Shown piece by piece: positions 59 through 56,905 of a stretch of DNA of 56,905 nucleotides; position 1 is the first letter of the stretch; each line of letters begins with the position of its first letter. The stretch lies in contig NC_068982.1 in the NCBI RefSeq assembly GCF_001194135.2, positions 147,881,740 to 147,938,644 of the forward strand, in the 5' to 3' direction. The DNA comes from Octopus bimaculoides. Lineage: Eukaryota. Below the pieces are notes generated by a model. It searched no databases. It was not told the origin of the DNA and saw only the letters and a list, made by a program, of their open reading frames with translations. Position numbers and translations under genes: made by a program.

Positions 59-118
59 GAGTTTCGGTCTAACAAATCCACTCGCAAAGCTTTGGTCGTC
101 CGGAGATTATAGTCGTAG
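57..118 (-). mobile_element. CORE-like tRNA-SINE fragment
   Basis: gtttcggtctaacaaatccactcgcaaagctttggtcgtcc is a diverged reverse complement of the SINE body at 41140-41200. Confidence 0.7.
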
Positions 119-120
119 AT

Positions 121-606
121 AATCTAGAATGCATGCCCAAAGAAGTTGCACAACTCTACCGCAACGTATCATCAGATGAAAGGATGAGCCTATAGGAGTA
201 GAAGACTATGCATGGATATGTTACTGGAAAGCTCCGTGATGACAGTAACATTGATCATCAAAGCTGTTTATCATGGACCAATAGCCAGATTACTGCCTCC
301 CACTTTGAAGGATATGGGTTTGCAATACAAGAACAGGAAATATCAACCAAGTACCTGATGCACAAAAGGGATAGAGATCCAGGAAAAGACGTAAAATGTG
401 ACAACCGATGCCGACTTTGTAGAGTTAGCACTGAAAATATCACCTACATCATAAGCAGTTGTCCGAAAATGTCATCACAGTTATATTTACTGATGAGACA
501 TTATGTTGTAGCTAGGACACTCTATAATGAGATCTGTCGGAAGAATGTCCCAGTGAAGACCTCAGTAAAATGTAAGCACAACAGACCTGATATAATGATT
601 TTCTAA
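121..606 (+). pseudogene. R4/Dong-clade non-LTR retrotransposon remnant (C-terminal zinc knuckle + start of REL endonuclease)
   Basis: ORF 208-606: EGYGFAIQEQEISTKY, CRLC-x7-Y-x4-C (degenerate CCHC), MRHYVVAR (RHD box), HNRPDIM (REL PD motif). Confidence 0.88.
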
Positions 607-8655: not shown

Positions 8656-8888
8656 CTCAAACACACATATGTATATGTACACATACATACATACGTAGGA
8701 ATGCGTACATTTATGTATGTATGTTTGTATGTATGTGCGTATATTCATCTGTCTGTCTCTGTTTGTCTGTCTGTTTGTCTGTCTGTCTCTGTCTGTCTGT
8801 TTGTCTATGTATATATATACATGTATATGTATGTATGTACGTATGTACTACGTATGTATGTGTGTGTGTGTGTGTGTGTGTTTGCGTG

Positions 8889-8931
<43 letters not shown>

Positions 8932-25395: not shown

Positions 25396-28030
25396 GCATG
25401 TGTACAGTCCTCCAATGCAGTTTTTTGTCCACATTTTTTGTAATGGAGATTATTAGCTGGAAGAGAGAAGGAGGAAGTAGGGGAGAGGGGGACAATAGAC
25501 AGAGAGAGGGGAGTAAAGAAAGAAGGAAAGAAAGGAAGAAAGCAGGAAATTAAGACAGACAGATAGACAGATCAACAGAGACAGTGATAGAATGTTAAAT
25601 CAACTGGGAAACGGTAAGCAAACAGTCATAAAAACAGAATGACTGTTAGACAGACGGACATAGAAAGAGAATCAGAGACATGAAAGACTGCATTTGTGTA
25701 TATTAAATGTAAAGTTAAAGAATGGTAGGATAAAAAAAATATAGGATTAGAATGTTGAAACGATAAAAGAAAAAAGAAAAGATTATCAGGAAGTACATGA
25801 TGCCTGTGTCTTGGTGTCATATCTATGTCCACTATGACGTTTGAGATATGCAAATGTATTCTAAGAATACATCTTTAGACGAGATAATAAATATATTAAT
25901 TGTTCGCTTACTAGAGTTTTATGACAACGAAATTCTCTTTGAGTGTGAAATAACTACATCAATTTGACTAAATCAACGTGACTAAAATATCTTGGAATTC
26001 CATACACGTTTCAAAAGCTACATACACGATATAAGGTAAATTACACTTCCTAGTTCCAGAACGGTTCAATTTTGGTGCAGCAGTAGCAGTGGCAACAAAA
26101 CTGCAGCAGCAGCAGCAGCAGCTGTAGTGTGGTATCATGGAGTCTATGTAAATCACGATATTTTGCTATTGCTGTTGTTGTGTTGTCTCTGTTCTTTAAC
26201 CTCAGTTTATCTGATCGATCAGGCATATGATGAGACATGTCATGTGACCATTCCACTCCTAACAGTTCCATCCTGTTAATGGATATCTAGAACAACATTC
26301 ACCAACGTATATTTTTATTTCGGCGTGAGCAATTTCACTGAGACTTAACTGCTTTTTCTAACAGGTCGAAAAACCACGTAAACGTCTTCAGTGAAGCAAA
26401 CGTTATGCTCAAAACGATGCGACATAACTTCCGTGCTCCGGAAAGGTCACATTTGCTATTGTGTATCTATTACTCCATTGGATAACCTGTTTAACCATTT
26501 AGTGTGACATTATGACTGAGATTGTTAATGGCGATAGCCTTGCACACCTGGAAAGAAATGATTGCACCAGGTATTTCTTTTTAAAGATCTTCCTCTTAAT
26601 TTGATCTTCGAAAATGTCCAGCTGGATAAATAACATGTGTTATACAAACGGCCGCGAGAAACAGTATATAAAAAAAGTATAGATCCATCCATCCATTCAT
26701 TCATACATCCATCCACCCATCCATTCATCCATCCATTCTTACATACATACATACATACATACATGCATGCATGNNNNNNNNNNTATATATATATATATAT
26801 ATATATCTATATATATATATATTGTGACTCTCATTGGATTTTATAAAGTTATTTATTCTAAGTAAGACAGTATATCTTGCATTACTTTAAAAATATCTTT
26901 TATTATTATAACGTTTAAAGACAACAAATGTTTCGCAATCGACATATTGGCATTTCGACATATCTGGATCCGATCTGCTTCGGTACCTTATTTCAGACTG
27001 TTTGTTTGCCAGTTAATGTTTTGAGAAAGATATTTGACGAAAACGAGGCGCTAAGTAATTTTATCCCTTAGTTTCATCGACCTTTTAAACAATGATATTT
27101 CAAATGGTACCACAATTAACTATGTATAACGAAAACTTTATATCTATTATTGAAATCGTAAATCTCTTTTTACACATATTGCAACAAACTGACTGCTTTG
27201 GATGGGCCACATTTAGCTAATCGAACAAAGCAGCAACACTGGTGGGAAAGAAATTTAGATACAACATGGATTTTGTCAGTTGTGTTTAGTTTCCCAATAT
27301 TTTCGTAATAAATCACATTAAATTACTAAGAACACAAAATATTACAGATTACATCGATACAGCGGAAACTTCATTCATTGATTATCTATACAATGAAACT
27401 ATTAAACTGTAAAAAAGGGCTACATAGACAAGTTAACTGCATAATATATCATAGCAATAGCCTTTAACCCATAAAATCCTCTGCTACTACGAGTTCAACT
27501 ATCACATCGATGATCTACACTTATTATACTTAACATGACCAACAGTAGCAGAACAGCAACAGCAGCAATAATTACCATAAAGACATTAAATTCTAAACTG
27601 ATTGCTCTAGATATTATTGGTACTGTTGTTTATCTCCTGCACGAGAAAACCTTGGACCGAAGATCTTCCGTCCGCGGCCATCTCATGTTTTTAAGGTCAT
27701 ACAAAATCATTTTATTTAATATTTCTTTTCTAAAGATTCCTGGTGAGAAGAAGGATATTCAGTGACTGCATACATTCCTCAAGGAGAGAGACACGGCAGC
27801 TGAAACAAGCTCAAGATAGCTATGGTTGTTAGAAGACTGCAAATGCAACTCTTCCGCAGTCGAAAACTAGTTCAGTTATTGCTGCACCACTCAGGCAAAG
27901 CGTGCAGGGACATCACCAATACATGTTTAATTCGCCTCTCAAACAGCAGTTGATCCATTACCTTAAATCTAATTCAACAGCAGGTTAATACAAAATATAA
28001 TAGAAGATAGGCGTGGACATGACTAAAACC

Positions 28031-37357: not shown

Positions 37358-37750
37358 ATACACCATGAAACACACACACTTACATATATGCAAGGTCGTC
37401 TCAATCAGAGTTCACCATTATGTAACTTCACCTAGAAACCTTTCCAATGTAAAAGACAAGACCGATAAAGCTTTACAACCGTGAAGTCACACGTTGGCTT
37501 CAGAATACAAAGAGACAGCAGGGCAAATCATCTGACAATCTAACAATTCCATCAAATCACTACCCTGAAATGATTCTTTATTTTTTACTGACTCCGAAAG
37601 GATGAAAGGTAATGTTGACTACCATGGGATTTAAACTCAGAGTGCAAAGAGCCAGAATTTATGGTGCATGACTTTCTCTCCGACTCACTATCGGCTCTAC
37701 CTCATACATACATACATACATACATACATACATACATACATACATACATA

Positions 37751-38849
37751 AAGATAGAGTAACCCGAGAATATTACACCAGACTTAGGAAAATATGGCAT
37801 CGGAACTCTCCACTTACAACAAAACAATATCCCACAATGTATTTGCAGTACCTGTGCTGATCCCAACATTTGGGACAGGTATCAAAACCCGTAAAATCTT
37901 GACGACAACTGGGAACTTTCACAGAAACAGTGATGTTGACAGGCTCTACCTAAGAAGAAATGAAGGTGGTAGAAGCCTAAGATCACTGCAGGTGGCTTTC
38001 GGATGCCGTATGGTATCACTCAGACAGCATCTGCTAAACAACAGCAGCAAAAATAGAAATATAAATGTAGTGCTGAAAAGTGAAGTGAGCAACATTGTAC
38101 GAGTTGGCTGAGTTCCTCACGAAGCACTCTCTTCCTGATGAACTCCTATACAGCCCCAAAACAGCTAGGCTCTCTTACCTCAGAGAAGACCTGGATGGAA
38201 AGAAAGCACTCAACATACAAAAAAAAAAAAATGTCATCACGGTACCTAAAATGTCGTCAGGGTACTATCTCCCTATGCGGCACGATTTTGTTGCTAAACG
38301 CAAAACAGACTGTCCTGAAATAAACTTAGAAAATCCCTGTTATGGAATACATTCATAAACACCAACTCAAGGAATACTGATGGAATATTCCTATCAAAAC
38401 TTCTGTTAAATGTAAATATAACAGGCCGGATATTGTTGTTTGGGACAGAGGGGCAAAATTGTGTACCATCATAGAGGCCAGCTCCCTGTAGATATAAATA
38501 TCTCTTTGAAAATCAAAGAAAAAGAGGACAACTGCTTTGAAACCTCCAGTTTCTATATCCAGACTATGAATTCATATTCATACCAATAGTAACTGGAGCA
38601 CTAGGCTTTGTTAGTAAATGCATAAAGGAGAATCTGGATAAACTGGGATTTTCAGAAAGAGAAATCAACCGGCTAATTCGTACATTACCAGTGCAATCAG
38701 TGAATGGAACAGTAAAAATATGCAAGACTTTTCTCAAGTTCTAAAAATGAATTTGTCTGTGTTAACTACATCCCAAAGATGGAACCTTGTATCTTTGTTG
38801 GCTCGCTCCTCAATGGAAGATTTATATGCTTAAAAAATAGAAGAGATAT

Positions 38850-38850
<1 letters not shown>
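37751..38850 (+). pseudogene. 5'-truncated R4-clade LINE subfamily A with REL domain and 3' UTR
   Basis: SELSTYNKTISHNVFAVPVL; NSDVDRLYLRRNEGGR; MRHDFVAK; YNRPDIVVWDR...IIEAS (PD-(D/E)xK); IPIVTGALG; TVKICKTFLKF* (stop 38742-38744); the 5' end abuts (CATA)n at 37703-37750. Confidence 0.88.
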
Positions 38851-38881
<31 letters not shown>

Positions 38882-39379
38882 NNNNNNNNNNNNNNNNNNN
38901 NNNNNNNNNNNNNNNNNNNNNNNNNNNNNNNNNNNNNNNNNNNNNNNNNNNNNNNNNNNNNNNNNNNNNNNNNNNNNNNNNNNNNNNNNNNNNNNNNNNN
39001 NNNNNNNNNNNNNNNNNNNNNNNNNNNNNNNNNNNNNNNNNNNNNNNNNNNNNNNNNNNNNNNNNNNNNNNNNNNNNNNNNNNNNNNNNNNNNNNNNNNN
39101 NNNNNNNNNNNNNNNNNNNNNNNNNNNNNNNNNNNNNNNNNNNNNNNNNNNNNNNNNNNNNNNNNNNNNNNNNNNNNNNNNNNNNNNNNNNNNNNNNNNN
39201 NNNNNNNNNNNNNNNNNNNNNNATATATAGCTATCTGTACGTTGTATGCATTGGCGATATTGAAGCCACAGGTGCTAACTACTCTTTAGAATATATACAA
39301 AACTTACATCATTTCCTGAATTGGACAAATATGAATATTATAGCTGAAAGTGAGATTGTCACAGTCCAGAATAAGGGGA

Positions 39380-41226: not shown

Positions 41227-41844
41227 NNNNNNNNNNNNNNNNNNNNNNNNNNNNNNNNNNNNNNNNNNNNNNNNNNNNNNNNNNNNNNNNNNNNNNNNNN
41301 NNNNNNNNNNNNNNNNNNNNNNNNNNNNNNNNNNNNNNNNNNNNNNNNNNNNNNNNNNNNNNNNNNNNNNNNNNNNNNNNNNNNNNNNNNNNNNNNNNNN
41401 NNNNNNNNNNNNNNNNNNNNNNNNNNNNNNNNNNNNNNNNNNNNNNNNNNNNNNNNNNNNNNNNNNNNNNNNNNNNNNNNNNNNNNNNNNNNNNNNNNNN
41501 NNNNNNNNNNNNNNNNNNNNNNNNNNNNNNNNNNNNNNNNNNNNNNNNNNNNNNNNNNNNNNNNNNNNNNNNNNNNNNNNNNNNNNNNNNNNNNNNNNNN
41601 NNNNNNNNNNNNNNNNNNNNNNNNNNNNNNNNNNNNNNNNNNNNNNNNNNNNNNNNNNNNNNNNNNNNNNNNNNNNNNNNNNNNNNNNNNNNNNNNNNNN
41701 NNNNNNNNNNNNNNNNNNNNNTATCCAGTAGAAGTATTATACGTATTTCCAGGTTTGTGCTTGGGCATCTGTCGTGTGTGAAAATATAGAAATTAAAAAA
41801 TAAATGTCCGACCGTACCTCTTCTTGTTCAGTCCAATTTTATAT

Positions 41845-42195
41845 ATGTAAGTATGTATGTATGTATGTATGTCTCCTATTTTTAATTATTATATATCTTC
41901 CACTGAGGAGGGAGCTGGTTTCCAACAAAGATACAAGGCTCTGTCTTCGGGATGTAGTTAACACAGACAAATTCACATTTGGAACCTGAGAAAAGTTTTG
42001 CATATTTTTACTGTTCCACTCACAGATTTCACTTGTAATGTACAAATTAGTCAGTCGATTTCTCTTTCTGAAAATCCCAGTTTATCCTGAATCTCCTTTA
42101 AGCATTTACTAACAAAACTGAGTGCTCCAATTATTATTGGTATGAATATGAATTCATAGTCTGGATTATTATTGGTATGATTATGAATTCATAGT
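41845..42195 (-). pseudogene. R4 subfamily A 3' end (ORF end, 3' UTR, CATA tail)
   Basis: PDYEFIFIPIIIGALSFVSKC...GTVKICKTFLRF; UTR matches 38745-38850; tail gagacatacatacatacatac. Confidence 0.88.
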
Positions 42196-42560
42196 TTGTA
42201 TGTGTGTCATTCTTCAGTTTTATTTCAAGATTTTTTGCCAACAGAGAAAGAACCGGTTTCTAACCCAGATCCAAGACTCCTTCATAGGAATTTCAACATC
42301 AATAACAGAGTATTTTTCTTTGTATGTATGTATGCATGTATGTGCAGATTTGTATGTTTTGTGTATGTATTCACATGCTTATAGTGGCATATATAGACAT
42401 GTTCATGTATATGTTTAAATGTTAAACTTCTGGAAAGTTTTACAGATTTTACAGTAGTCTTCGAATTAGCTTTCTCCTTTATGGTTTTGAGAAGCCTAAT
42501 TTCTCAAGATTGGTATTTAGGCAATGTGTTACATATCCCAGGGTCACAATAGTTACAGGT
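42196..42560 (-). pseudogene. R4 subfamily B 3' end (ORF end, 3' UTR with internal CATA tract)
   Basis: IPVTIVTLGYVTHCLNTNLEKLGFS...RKLIRRL..TVKICKTFQKFNI*; terminal UTR matches 17737-17850 and 51560-51665. Confidence 0.85.
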
Positions 42561-43054
42561 ATATATATATATATATATATATATATNNNNNNNNNNNNNN
42601 NNNNNNNNNNNNNNNNNNNNNNNNNNNNNNNNNNNNNNNNNNNNNNNNNNNNNNNNNNNNNNNNNNNNNNNNNNNNNNNNNNNNNNNNNNNNNNNNNNNN
42701 NNNNNNNNNNNNNNNNNNNNNNNNNNNNNNNNNNNNNNNNNNNNNNNNNNNNNNNNNNNNNNNNNNNNNNNNNNNNNNNNNNNNNNNNNNNNNNNNNNNN
42801 NNNNNNNNNNNNNNNNNNNNNNNNNNNNNNNNNNNNNNNNNNNNNNNNNNNNNNNNNNNNNNNNNNNNNNNNNNNNNNNNNNNNNNNNNNNNNNNNNNNN
42901 NNNNNNNNNNNNNNNNNNNNNNNNNNNNNNNNNNNNNNNNNNNNNNNNNNNNNNNNNNNNNNNNNNNNNNNNNNNNNNNNNNNNNNNNNNNNNNNNNNNN
43001 NNNNNNNNNNNNNNNNNNNNNNNNNNNNNNNNNATATATATATATATATATATA

Positions 43055-51534: not shown

Positions 51535-51670
51535 GAGGTATGTATGTATATATGGAAGTCATTATTCAGTTTTATTTTAAGATTTCTTGCTAATAGAAAA
51601 AGAGCCGGTTTTTAACCTAGATCCATAGCTCCTTCATTGGAGTTTCAACATCAACAGGGTGTTTTTAATA
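51535..51670 (-). mobile_element. R4 subfamily B terminal 3' UTR
   Basis: gtcattattcagttttattttaagatttcttgc...gagccggtttttaacctagatccatagctc; flanked by gtatgtatgtat. Confidence 0.8.
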
Positions 51671-55774: not shown

Positions 55775-56025
55775 TAATGAATGACCTTCCGAGGCACAAG
55801 CCAGGGCAAGATTGTTTGTGGGAGGCAACCAGTCGCCCATGCATACCAGCCTCCCCTCTCCACTCCACTGATGTTATCCAAGGGAAAGGCAAAGGCCGAT
55901 ACAGCTTGGCACCTGTGACGTCGCAACTCATTTCTACAGATGAGTGAACTGGAGCAACGTGAAATAAAGTGTCTTGCTCAAGAACACAACACACAGCCCG
56001 GTCCGGGAATCGAACTCACAACCTA
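55775..56025 (-). mobile_element. tRNA-CORE-like SINE of another tail type, head cut by the adjacent LINE
   Basis: Reverse: gagttcgattcccggacc...gttcttgagcaagacactttatttcacgttgctccag...gcgacgtcacaggtgccaagctgtatcggcc. Confidence 0.75.
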
Positions 56026-56026
56026 G

Positions 56027-56343
56027 CATATATGGGTATGCCACTAGCCCAGAAGGAATATAAGAGACGCCACGACACTATAGCCAGGTTTGTCCATTGG
56101 ACCCTTTGCCACAAGTATGGTCTTGATAAAGAAAAAAATTGGTACGACCACAAACCCGAAAATGATAATGATAATGCAAAGATCCTGTGGGATTTTATGA
56201 TTCAGTGCGACCATGAGATAGAAAATAGGAAGTCAGACATAGTCTTAATTGAGAAAGAAAATAAACTATGCTAGATCATAGATATAGCATGCCCAGCTGA
56301 CAACAAGGTATGCGATAGGGAAGAAAGAAGAGTCCATAGGTGT
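56027..56343 (+). pseudogene. Dong-like R4-clade LINE fragment (REL domain)
   Basis: LAQKEYKRRHDTIARFVHW...WYDHKPE...KILWDFMIQCDHEIENRKSDIVLIEK...IIDIACP. Confidence 0.9.
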
Positions 56344-56344
56344 A

Positions 56345-56815
56345 TGTGTGCCTTAGGTATGTGCTGTAGTTTGTTGTGATGCTCTTATAGCTACTGTATT
56401 GAAAGTGTTTTACGTAGGATGTGTGCAGTACCTTGTAGTGCTATTTTCTGCATATTATATATATTTGTAAGTCCTGGTGTTTTTGTTATGTATTTGTCTG
56501 AATATTTTTTTATCATACCTAATGCGCCCACTATGATAGGAATTGTTTCTGTTTTTAGACTCCACATTCGAGTTACCTCTATTTCAAGGTCTTTGTATTT
56601 TGAAAGTTTCTCCATTTCTTTTAGAGAAACTTTGTCATCTCTTGGTACTGATACACCAATTAGAAAACACTTTCTTCTTCATGATCTCTGACAACTATGT
56701 CTGGCCTATTGGCCTTAATTTCTCTATCTGTGTATATTGGCATATAACATAGTATTGTTAATTTCTCTTTTTCTATGACCTTTTCTGGCGTGTGTTATTC
56801 CATAGTGCTGGCATA
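56345..56815 (-). pseudogene. Dong-like R4-clade LINE 3' end (REL C-terminus and partial 3' UTR)
   Basis: TDREIKANRPDIVV; VSVPRDDKVSLKEMEKLSKYKDLEIEVTRMW...IPIIVGALG...QKIALQGTAHILRK; stop at 56391; the 5' end abuts (TGA)n/(TAA)n. Confidence 0.92.
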
Positions 56816-56817
56816 GT

Positions 56818-56905
<88 letters not shown>
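56818..56905. repeat. (ATC)n-(ATT)n compound microsatellite
   Basis: Direct reading. Confidence 0.97.

What the first reader, a model, noticed from the sequence alone, without database searches (positions are those of the whole stretch)
37703..38860. R4-clade REL retrotransposon lineage apparently targeting (CATA)n tetranucleotide repeats
Seen: this truncated copy starts right after about 12 pure CATA units in its own sense. Related 3' ends fall in CATA-type sequence at 25190 (aacatacatacat), 41850, 42200, 17850 and 51540; this copy's own tail at 38848 has drifted to (CA)n. Established: R4-clade REL elements are often sequence-specific (rDNA for R4, TAA repeats for Dong). Inference: this lineage uses (CATA)n/(TATG)n as a target, which I do not recall being described, and may both exploit and seed the abundant TATG tracts. 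Only one clean 5' junction is available here.
Basis: partly seen in the sequence, partly recalled or inferred. Interest (0 to 1): 0.8.

Follow-up and report, generated by a model that had tools for sequence, protein, structure and literature searches.

The report
Octopus Dong-like retrotransposons targeting (ACAT)n microsatellites
Dead copies of a Dong-type jumping gene in this octopus sequence sit inside (CATA)n simple repeats in one fixed orientation, and intact relatives in other animals have the same repeat on both sides, so the lineage targets this repeat; that is a new target motif for a known kind of repeat-specific element, not a new kind of element.

Summary
A pure (CATA)12 tract (37703-37750) directly abuts the 5' end of a degenerate, 5'-truncated retrotransposon copy (37751-38845). 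That copy encodes the C-terminal part of a reverse transcriptase plus a restriction-like endonuclease.

The inference is supported, and by more than one junction:
- **Window junctions.** Four of six readable 5' junctions in the window abut same-sense ACAT-type repeat, against a background of 0.25-1.4% of positions (P about 3-6e-7). All seven 3' ends run into ACAT-type, or (CA)n-rich ACAY-type, tails.
- **Relatives elsewhere.** Eight contigs from other, unidentified organisms carry related elements 0.4-3.9 kb long. Each is flanked on both sides by same-sense (ACAT)n.
- **Sister families.** These are flanked by (ACTT)n, (TAA)n or (ATG)n.

The lineage is therefore a Dong-like, microsatellite-specific LINE whose target motif is (ACAT)n. 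[quoted passage not shown]

The papers I could search describe (TAA)n as the Dong target. They report ACAY targeting only for Waldo, a different clade with a different nuclease. I could not check Repbase or Dfam.

The idea that the elements seed the repeats was not supported. My verdict is a new target variant of a known kind, of moderate interest.

The parts
37480..37702 (-). Old, diverged tRNA-derived SINE. Its head abuts the (CATA)12 tract. It shows that copy A does not continue upstream.
   Evidence: blastn and alignment with SINE copies at 47513-, 47734-, 7123rc and 6318rc
37703..37750 (+). (CATA)12, 100% pure. This is the retained upstream part of the target microsatellite at copy A's 5' junction.
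   Evidence: TRF; sequence
37751..38845 (+). Copy A, a dead 5'-truncated Dong-like element. It holds the RT C-terminal/linker region, a CCHC region that is mostly deleted, the REL motif NRPDIVVWD...IIE at 38420-38479, the ORF end KICKTFLKF with its stop at 38742-38744, and a 3' UTR at 38745-38845.
   Evidence: three-frame translation; tblastn; 68 homologues
38846..38881 (+). Copy A's 3' tail, ATATACACG(CA)n. It is ACAY-like rather than pure ACAT. The N gap at 38882-39222 cuts it.
41873..42195 (-). Copy B. It belongs to the same family as A (86% identity over the last ~300 bp) and is 5'-truncated. It carries a 31-bp tandem duplication at its 5' end.
   Evidence: blastn; sequence
41841..41872 (-). 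Copy B's 3' flank in its own sense, ACATACATACATACATACATACTTACATATAT, followed by unique DNA.
42196..42207 (-). ACACACATACAA. This is the remnant of the repeat between the 111-bp unit and copy B. It serves as the unit's 3' flank and as B's 5' flank.
42208..42320 (-). A 113-bp copy of the short unit (last ~12 codons plus 3' UTR of a sister family), preceded by ...CATACATACATACA.
   Evidence: blastn, 88% to the 17740 copy; alignment
42321..42414 (-). Degenerate CATA-rich 3' UTR/tail of copy C, ending in pure CATA units.
42415..42586 (-). Copy C, the 3' end of a more distant family. Its ORF ends ...KICKTFQKFNI*. The N gap at 42587 cuts its 5' side.
   Evidence: tblastn; sequence
17640..17739 (+). 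(ACAT)~25 array containing a 10-N gap. It lies directly upstream of a short unit, and no other element lies upstream of the array.
   Evidence: TRF
17740..17850 (+). A 111-bp short unit. Its 3' flank is ACATACATACATGCATA(TA)n, at 17851-17885.
51560..51668 (-). Third copy of the short unit. Its 3' flank is ACTTCCATATATACATACATAC, at 51559-51538. Its 5' flank is not CATA.
23394..25176 (+). Copy D, a distant family (~38% aa identity to A) with a readable CCHC (CRHC...H...C). The gap at 23256-23375 cuts its 5' side. It carries ~555 bp of unrelated DNA at 24241-24795.
   Evidence: tblastn; sequence
25177..25188 (+). Copy D's tail, ACATACATACAT. About 200 bp of opposite-sense (TATG)n follows at 25199-25401.
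118..603 (+). Copy E, a related family. It is 70% aa identical to O. bimaculoides protein P0036 and 85% DNA identical to L001. No CATA lies at its 5' side; (CA)29 lies ~60 bp upstream.

Best explanation
The region holds relics of a Dong-like non-LTR retrotransposon lineage that carries a restriction-like endonuclease (RLE). The lineage integrates, in one fixed orientation, into (ACAT)n = (CATA)n microsatellites.

**What is shown**
- Elements and fragments are embedded in same-sense ACAT repeat at both junctions.
- Independent truncated copies pile up head-to-tail inside one repeat tract.
- Intact relatives are 3.8-3.9 kb long with a single ORF of about 1,150 aa. The ORF order is N-terminal Myb/SANT-like domain, RT, CCHC knuckle, PD-(D/E) endonuclease.
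- The unique part of the element almost always ends in G, followed directly by ACAT.

**What is inferred, from R2 and Dong biology**
1. The Myb-like domain, with the rest of the protein, recognises the repeat duplex.
2. The RLE nicks the (ATGT)n strand.
3. The freed 3' end primes reverse transcription of the element RNA (target-primed reverse transcription). Pairing with ACAU repeats read through at the RNA 3' end probably helps.
4. Incomplete reverse transcription gives the 5'-truncated copies seen here.
5. Second-strand cleavage leaves repeat on the 5' side, usually ending ...CATACA or ...CATA.

New copies bring or preserve repeat at their 3' end, and that repeat is itself a target. This explains the tandem clusters. 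All copies in the window are dead.
For: **Window junctions**
- 5' junctions are A 12/12, unit17740 12/12, unit42320 12/12 and B 10/12 ACAT-type. Background is 0.25% for 12/12 and 1.4% for 10/12 or better.
- 3' flanks are ACAT-type, or CA-rich ACAY-like, for all 7 ends.
- The same-orientation cluster reads C, CATA-rich stretch, unit, ACACACATACAA, B, (ACAT)6.
- Upstream of A's tract is a SINE, and upstream of the 17640 array is unique DNA. These repeats are therefore not tails of other copies.

**Relatives with (ACAT)n on both sides**
- L004: (ATAC)73, a 1,999-bp element, (ACAT)73, a 396-bp element, (ACAT)51.
- L005: 3,894 bp. L012: 3,784 bp. L040: 2,990 bp. L041: 3,900 bp.
- L046: (ACAT)23, element, (ATAC)232.
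- L047: also flanked on both sides.
- Sources.

**Sister families with other repeats**
- (ACTT)n on both sides in L008, L042 and L043. (TAA)n, (ATG)n and (AT)n on the 3' side in L020-L024.

**Tree, architecture and literature**
- Octopus copies A and D fall in a bootstrap-100 clade among ACAT-type families.
- Architecture: RVT_1; CCHC and NRPD...E consensus; conserved N-terminal Myb-like block, as described for R4/Dong in PMC7998251.
- R2 proteins are the best PDB hits, E = 1e-27 to 1e-20.
- Dong's (TAA)n specificity is documented in PMC3812793 and PMC7998251.
Against: - The window holds only seven 3' ends and six readable 5' junctions from this lineage. Two of the 5' junctions (unit51.6k and E) are not CATA.
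- Two of the four positive 5' junctions lie in one cluster, so their upstream repeat is the tail of the preceding copy.
- Copy A's own tail is mostly (CA)n and runs into an assembly gap.
- No empty (pre-insertion) allele was available.
- The both-sides evidence comes from unidentified non-octopus organisms. No protein more than 70% identical to the window copies exists in the database.
- Nothing here separates protein-level sequence recognition from simple annealing of a repeat-bearing RNA tail.
- No 5' HDV-like ribozyme was detected in relatives.
Confidence: 0.85

Rival explanations
1. The CATA repeat is only a self-encoded 3' tail, as in many LINEs. Insertion is essentially random, and the 5' adjacency of copy A is a coincidence in a genome rich in simple repeats.
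For: All copies carry ACAT-type 3' tails. The window is rich in simple repeats, with 110 TRF rows. Two 5' junctions lack CATA.
Against: Perfect same-sense 12-nt flanks occur at 0.25% of positions, yet at 3 of 6 5' junctions (P = 3.3e-7). The tracts upstream of A and of unit17740 are not preceded by another element. Relatives on eight contigs have long same-sense arrays on both sides.
Confidence: 0.03
2. Passive association. The elements insert anywhere but are retained, or accumulate, in repeat-rich regions of low recombination. Alternatively, the microsatellites grow out of element ends after insertion (seeding).
For: Waldo-A/B in Drosophila are thought to accumulate passively near CA repeats (PMC3812793). 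ACAT-type arrays are the commonest tetranucleotide repeat in the window.
Against: The junctions are exact, base-for-base abutments in one relative orientation in every case: 10 of 10 5' arrays and all 3' arrays. Random truncation points have no CATA sequence from which a 5' array could grow. Different families and truncation lengths share one tract. Three large arrays have no element beside them, so arrays exist without elements.
Confidence: 0.04
3. The target preference is real, but the protein does not read the sequence. An RNA whose 3' end carries (ACAU)n anneals to nicked or breathing (ATGT)n DNA, so the tail, not the Myb-like domain or the endonuclease, dictates where reverse transcription can start.
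For: Every copy ends in the repeat. The register at the 3' junction (G then ACAT) marks only the end of unique sequence. Target motifs differ between closely related families, ACAT versus ACTT, which a change of tail could achieve quickly.
Against: In R2 the N-terminal ZF/Myb region and the RLE determine site choice, and R4/Dong carry a conserved N-terminal Myb/SANT-like domain (PMC7998251). That domain is conserved in all full-length relatives here. This is indirect evidence only; nothing here tests the point.
Confidence: 0.15

Closest known systems
Dong (Bombyx mori) and Dong-like elements of insects, molluscs and cnidarians (R4 clade)
   Same: [quoted passage not shown] Oriented insertion inside a microsatellite, with frequent 5' truncation and tandem pile-ups. 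A B. mori Dong-like protein (P0063) and the (TAA)n-flanked loci L020/L021 align over their full length with the relatives used here.
   Different: [quoted passage not shown] Here the target is the tetranucleotide (ACAT)n. The octopus copies fall in a separate, well-supported clade at about 30% aa identity to the (TAA) group.
R4 (Ascaris and other nematodes)
   Same: Same clade by published classification, with the same RT-CCHC-RLE layout and strict target specificity.
   Different: R4 targets one site in 28S rDNA, not a microsatellite. No R4 reference sequence was available for direct comparison.
Waldo (WaldoAg1/2, WaldoFs1; R1 clade)
   Same: Targets ACAY microsatellites, which include ACAT (PMC3812793). 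This is the closest match in target sequence.
   Different: Waldo has an N-terminal apurinic-like endonuclease (APE) and belongs to the R1 clade. The elements here have a C-terminal restriction-like endonuclease, and their best PDB hits are R2 proteins. The target choice is convergent, not shared ancestry.
Togen ((TG)n-specific, NeSL-related) and microsatellite-specific HERO families
   Same: RLE LINEs specific for simple repeats (PMC4640811).
   Different: They belong to different clades and use different repeat motifs. The HERO report is a Repbase Reports note that I could not read, so I do not know its motif.
R2
   Same: Best solved-structure relatives (9nl2, 9dou, 8gh6). R2 is the mechanistic model for RLE nicking and target-primed reverse transcription.
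   Different: R2 has N-terminal zinc fingers plus Myb and targets 28S rDNA. No N-terminal zinc finger is seen in the relatives here.

Membership tests
RLE-encoding non-LTR retrotransposons (R2 group) | Reverse transcriptase domain | tested here: met
   RVT_1 is found in full-length relatives, E = 1e-22 to 1e-26. Window copy A retains only the region C-terminal to the RT core, because it is 5'-truncated.
RLE-encoding non-LTR retrotransposons (R2 group) | CCHC knuckle followed by a PD-(D/E)-type restriction-like endonuclease, C-terminal to RT | tested here: met
   The family consensus is KCRLCK..EDI.HII.SC and HNRPDIV.WD...K.C.IIE.SCP.D.N. Copy A has NRPDIVVWDRGAKLCTIIE, with its CCHC mostly deleted. 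Copy D has CRHC...H...C.
RLE-encoding non-LTR retrotransposons (R2 group) | Sequence similarity to experimentally characterised R2 proteins | tested here: met
   phmmer of the L005 ORF against the PDB hits R2 proteins 9nl2, 9nl3, 9dou, 8gh6 and 8ibw at E = 3.5e-27 to 1.8e-20.
R4/Dong clade | [quoted passage not shown] | tested here: met
   Met in full-length relatives: one ORF of ~1,150 aa with a conserved block NR.Y..F.W..ELN.DL...GYM.R.K..W...HPE, shared with the (TAA)-type loci. This matches PMC7998251. It cannot be tested in the window copies, which are all 5'-truncated.
R4/Dong clade | RT phylogeny groups with R4 and Dong references, apart from R2, HERO, NeSL and CRE | not tested
   No reference sequences were available. 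Indirect support only: an NJ tree places the lineage as sister to a clade holding a B. mori Dong-like protein and (TAA)n-flanked loci. Published octopus annotations call the abundant RLE LINEs Dong-R4, and HERO also occurs in octopus (PMC13282606, PMC9115989).
R4/Dong clade | Oriented insertion into one specific repeated target | tested here: met
   Same-sense (ACAT)n lies at both junctions.
R4/Dong clade | HDV-like self-cleaving ribozyme at the 5' end (shown for R4 and Dong, PMC3774820) | tested here: inconclusive
   An Rfam E-value scan of 8 loci with full-length or 5'-complete relatives found none. A strict home-made descriptor also found none. Pseudoknotted ribozymes are easily missed. The window has no 5'-complete copy.
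Dong sensu stricto ((TAA)n-specific) | Target is (TAA)n | tested here: not met
   Copies A-D and the three short units are flanked by ACAT-type repeat. A different fragment, G (56394-56812, minus strand), belongs to the (TAA)-type clade and lies next to (GAT)n(AAT)n.
Waldo (R1 clade, ACAY-specific) | N-terminal APE-type endonuclease | tested here: not met
   The endonuclease is C-terminal and restriction-like. No Exo_endo_phos hit appears in full-length relatives.
LINEs with a self-encoded microsatellite tail and non-specific insertion (RTE-, CR1- or I-like behaviour) | 5' flanks unrelated to the tail repeat | tested here: not met
   4 of 6 window 5' junctions, and all 9 5' junctions of the (ACAT)-type relatives, abut same-sense ACAT repeat.

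The most novel reading that the evidence does not exclude
The ACAT-type and ACTT-type families form a large, animal-wide radiation of Dong-like elements that the open literature has not described. Within it the target motif has switched repeatedly, sometimes by a single base (ACAT to ACTT), under a conserved N-terminal Myb-like domain. In octopus this lineage, together with 111-bp non-autonomous riders made of its 3' end, helps shape the dominant tetranucleotide repeat landscape. Because it lands inside microsatellites, where assemblies break and short reads do not map, its recent activity (for example in octopus brain studies) has been systematically under-counted.
Probability: 0.25. Interest if true: 0.65.

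Novelty: new variant of a known kind. Interest (0 to 1): 0.45.

Why it matters
- **Target range.** The finding extends the target repertoire of the R4/Dong group from rDNA and (TAA)n to a tetranucleotide repeat. One protein architecture has been retuned to ACAT, ACTT, TAA and ATG repeats. RLE LINEs of the R2 type are being developed as site-specific insertion tools. A natural series of close relatives whose targets differ by one base is a useful system for asking how the Myb-like domain and the endonuclease read DNA.
- **Octopus genomics.** Dong-R4 has the most recently active LINE insertions listed in the O. vulgaris annotation (PMC13282606). A short-read survey of O. bimaculoides nevertheless found almost no new Dong insertions (PMC9115989). 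Insertion inside microsatellites would make such events hard to map. In this window at least four of the 19 assembly gaps (those at 17688, 38882, 42587 and 55166) directly adjoin a simple repeat.
- **Repeat annotation.** ACAT arrays next to unexplained ~110-bp units may be element remnants.

Tried and rejected
1. **Element continuing upstream through the CATA tract.** One tblastn hit (P0064) suggested this. I rejected it because the upstream DNA is a SINE.
2. **More octopus copies by protein look-up.** No database protein is more than 70% identical to the window copies. The one O. bimaculoides locus (L001) holds a copy truncated at both ends beside a 6.7-kb gap and gave no junctions.
3. **HDV-like 5' ribozyme in relatives.** The Rfam scan gave only mir-297 and snoRNA false positives on the repeats. 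A strict descriptor gave nothing. The 5' UTRs show no obvious shared motif.
4. **Conserved 3' UTR hairpin.** RNAalifold predicted a weak stem with no compensatory changes, so I make no claim.
5. **Seeding of orphan arrays.** The flanks of the arrays at 8826-8929, 17025-17155 and 22962-23026 show no DNA or protein similarity to the elements.
6. **Literature search for a described (ACAT)n-specific R4/Dong or HERO family.** I found none in seven searches or in the papers I read. Repbase Reports and Dfam were not searchable.
7. **Hydractinia locus L045.** The copy is truncated and uninformative.

Full report
**What is at the coordinates**

The window is AT-rich (36% GC), full of simple repeats and broken by 19 N gaps. 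It shares DNA-level repeats with a fetched Octopus bimaculoides chromosome segment: copy E at 85% identity, plus several SINEs. It is therefore octopus or a close relative.

At 37703-37750 TRF reports (CATA)12.0 at 100% purity. From 37751 a degenerate reading frame, with several frameshifts and stops, matches the region just after the reverse-transcriptase core of a large protein family. The match starts at 'DRVTREYYTRLRKIW' and includes 'SDVDRLYLRRNEGGRSL'. It continues through a partly deleted CCHC region to a restriction-like endonuclease motif, 'NRPDIVVWDRGAKLCTIIE' (38420-38479). It ends with 'KICKTFLKF' and a stop codon at 38742-38744. A 101-bp 3' UTR ends at 38845. The tail after it is ATATACACG(CA)n, and an assembly gap cuts it at 38882.

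One tblastn alignment ran through the CATA tract into upstream DNA. That DNA aligns with four other copies of a tRNA-type SINE in the window. The element therefore truly begins at 37751, and the tract is a 5' flank.

**Other copies in the window**

tblastn with 171 related proteins and blastn with the element found these fragments:
- **Copy B** (42195-41873, minus strand). It is 86% identical to A and is followed by (ACAT)~6.
- **Copy C** (42586-42415, minus strand). It is cut by a gap on its 5' side and is followed by about 100 bp of degenerate CATA-rich sequence.
- **Copy D** (23394-25176, plus strand). It is about 38% identical to A at the protein level and is followed by ACATACATACAT.
- **Copy E** (118-603).
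- **A pair of fragments from a different subclade**, at 56014-56812.

The unit aligns with the 3' UTR of A and B and includes the last ~12 codons of a sister family's ORF.

The junction table shows:
- 5' flanks are CATACATACATA (A), TACATACATACA (unit at 17740), TACATACATACA (unit at 42320) and ACACACATACAA (B). Unit51.6k and E have unrelated flanks.
- 3' flanks begin ACAT... in four cases. In the others they are ACAY-like or degenerate.
- On the minus strand, 42586-41841 reads: C, CATA-rich stretch, unit, ACACACATACAA, B, (ACAT)6, unique DNA. Three independent truncated copies thus share one orientation in one repeat tract.

**Chance**

Only 0.25% of window positions on either strand have a perfect 12-nt ACAT-type sequence immediately upstream, and 1.4% match at 10 of 12 or better. 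Three of six junctions at 12/12 gives P = 3.3e-7. Four of six at 10/12 or better gives P = 5.9e-7. Counting only junctions whose upstream repeat cannot be another copy's tail (two of four) gives P = 3.9e-5.

**Relatives elsewhere**

No database protein is more than 70% identical to the window copies, so I could not fetch more octopus copies. More distant relatives (30-60% aa identity) were fetched with flanks from ENA, JGI and NCBI assemblies. The pattern is consistent.

| Flanking repeat | Loci |
|---|---|
| Same-sense (ACAT)n on both sides | L004 (two elements: 1,999 bp and 396 bp, between arrays of 73, 73 and 51 units), L005 (3,894 bp), L012 (3,784 bp), L040 (2,990 bp, in tandem with further copies), L041 (3,900 bp), L046 (arrays of 23 and 232 units), L047 |
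| (ACTT)n on both sides | L008, L042, L043 |
| (ACTT)n on one visible side | seven further contigs |
| (TAA)n-type, (ATG)n or (AT)n on the 3' side | L020-L024, L033 |
| (ATA)n on both sides | L036 |

The unique part of the ACAT-type elements almost always ends in G, directly followed by ACAT. The upstream array usually ends ...CATACA or ...CATA.

**Architecture and placement**

Full-length relatives have one ORF of about 1,150 aa:
- an RVT_1 domain;
- the CCHC and NRPD...E consensus;
- a conserved N-terminal block that matches the Myb/SANT-like domain reported for R4/Dong (PMC7998251);
- no N-terminal zinc finger.

Their best solved-structure relatives are R2 proteins.

In a neighbour-joining tree of 420 aligned columns with 100 bootstraps, octopus copies A and D and the O. 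bimaculoides protein P0036 fall in a bootstrap-100 clade. That clade also holds the ACAT-type families L005, P0002 (L047), P0081 (L040) and P0077 (L041), plus the main ACTT group. The ACAT-type L012 and L004 are sister to it.

The other major clade holds a Bombyx mori Dong-like protein. Its locus carries three tandem copies and an AATAA/TAA-like tail. That clade also holds the (TAA)n, (ATG)n and (AT)n loci, a second ACTT group, and P0112 (L046), which is again ACAT-type.

ACAT targeting is therefore widespread and possibly ancestral in the octopus-containing clade. Internal nodes are weakly supported, and I had no R4, Dong, HERO or NeSL reference sequences. Clade membership is supported but not formally tested.

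**Mechanism**

Shown here: oriented, exact embedding in (ACAT)n; 5' truncation; and pile-up in tails.

Inferred from R2 and Dong work (PMC3774820, PMC7998251, PMC4640811):
1. The Myb-like domain and the rest of the protein recognise the repeat.
2. The endonuclease nicks the (ATGT)n strand.
3. Target-primed reverse transcription follows, probably helped by pairing with repeat read through at the RNA 3' end.
4. Full-length transcripts may be released from upstream repeat by a 5' ribozyme.

I could not detect such a ribozyme. Nothing here separates protein-level specificity from annealing of the RNA tail. No target-site duplication can be read inside a microsatellite.

**Known or new**

- It gives 28S rDNA for R4, (TG)n for Togen and unspecified microsatellites for some HERO families (PMC4640811).
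- It reports ACAY repeats as a target only for Waldo, an APE-bearing R1-clade element (PMC3812793).
- Octopus repeat papers list Dong-R4 as abundant and recently active but do not discuss its target (PMC13282606, PMC9115989, PMC10294476).
- I found no description of an (ACAT)n-specific R4/Dong lineage.
- The pattern is so common in public assemblies that curators of Repbase or Dfam, which I could not consult, may already have noted it.

I rate it a new target variant of a known kind.

**Not supported**

The suggestion that the elements seed the abundant TATG tracts has no support here. Three large ACAT-type arrays have no recognisable element next to them. The data fit pre-existing repeats being used as targets, with tails adding more target locally.

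**Verdict**

The mechanism is inferred by analogy. Novelty is moderate and interest is 0.45.

Noticed in passing
17740-17850 (+), 42320-42208 (-), 51668-51560 (-): Three copies of a ~111-bp unit, 85-88% identical. The unit is the last ~12 codons plus the 3' UTR of a sister Dong-like family. All three start at essentially the same base, which suggests a discrete non-autonomous mini-element or a transcribed truncated master copy rather than random truncation.
   Followed up: partly
56014-56433 (+) and 56394-56812 (-): Two inverted, abutting fragments of a different Dong-like subclade. Their best hits are P0054 and P0060, which cluster with the Bombyx (TAA)-type group. In its own sense, the minus-strand fragment's 5' end lies 5 bp from (AAT)19(GAT)10 (56818-56905). 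This may be a classical (TAA)-type Dong in the same window.
   Followed up: partly
22962-23256 and 37480-37750: Two unrelated tRNA-derived SINEs have their heads within 5 bp of a (CATA)n tract: (CATA)16 then a plus-strand SINE from about 23031, and a minus-strand SINE whose head meets (CATA)12 at 37702. The relative orientations differ, so this may be coincidence.
   Followed up: no
42130-42195 (-): Copy B starts with a 31-bp direct duplication of its own 5' end (ACTATGAATTCATAATCATACCAATAATAAT, CCAG, then the same 31 bp with one mismatch). This looks like a template-switch or repair scar at the 5' junction.
   Followed up: no
24241-24795 and 25177-25401: Copy D carries about 555 bp with no similarity to the family between its CCHC and endonuclease regions. 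Its short (ACAT)3 tail is followed, after about 10 bp, by ~200 bp of opposite-sense (TATG)n.
   Followed up: no
118-603; L001 10286-10814: Copy E and the O. bimaculoides copy in L001 (85% DNA identity, rising to 97% over the last 59 bp) both stop at the same point inside the endonuclease motif (...KPDIMI). This suggests a family whose master copy was already 3'-truncated or interrupted.
   Followed up: no
gaps at 17688, 38882, 42587, 55166 and others: These assembly gaps sit directly inside or next to simple repeats, for example inside the (ACAT) array at 17688, after (CA)n at 38881, and next to (TA)n at 42587 and 55166. Junctions of repeat-targeting elements are therefore preferentially lost from this assembly.
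   Followed up: no
L002, L006-L010, L013, L014, L019, L042, L043: A large set of related families is flanked by (ACTT)n, one base different from ACAT. They appear in at least two places in the tree. L002 has (ACTT)15 on its 5' side but (ACTC)22 on its 3' side.
   Followed up: partly
L040, L044, L046: Related elements form head-to-tail tandem runs separated only by the target repeat. One (ATAC)n spacer in L046 is 926 bp long. The Bombyx locus L044 holds three tandem Dong-like copies.
   Followed up: partly
L020 107-190: The 5' end of a (TAA)-type relative begins with a sequence that looks tRNA-like (GGGCTGGTGGCTCGATCGGTAAGGGCG...GTTCGAACCC).
   Followed up: no
L005 2-70 and 4058-4122; L012 47-103 and 3876-3942: Rfam mir-297 matches, at E down to 1.5e-6 but below the gathering score, fall entirely on (ACAT)n arrays. 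They are repeat-driven false positives to watch for in annotation.
   Followed up: yes
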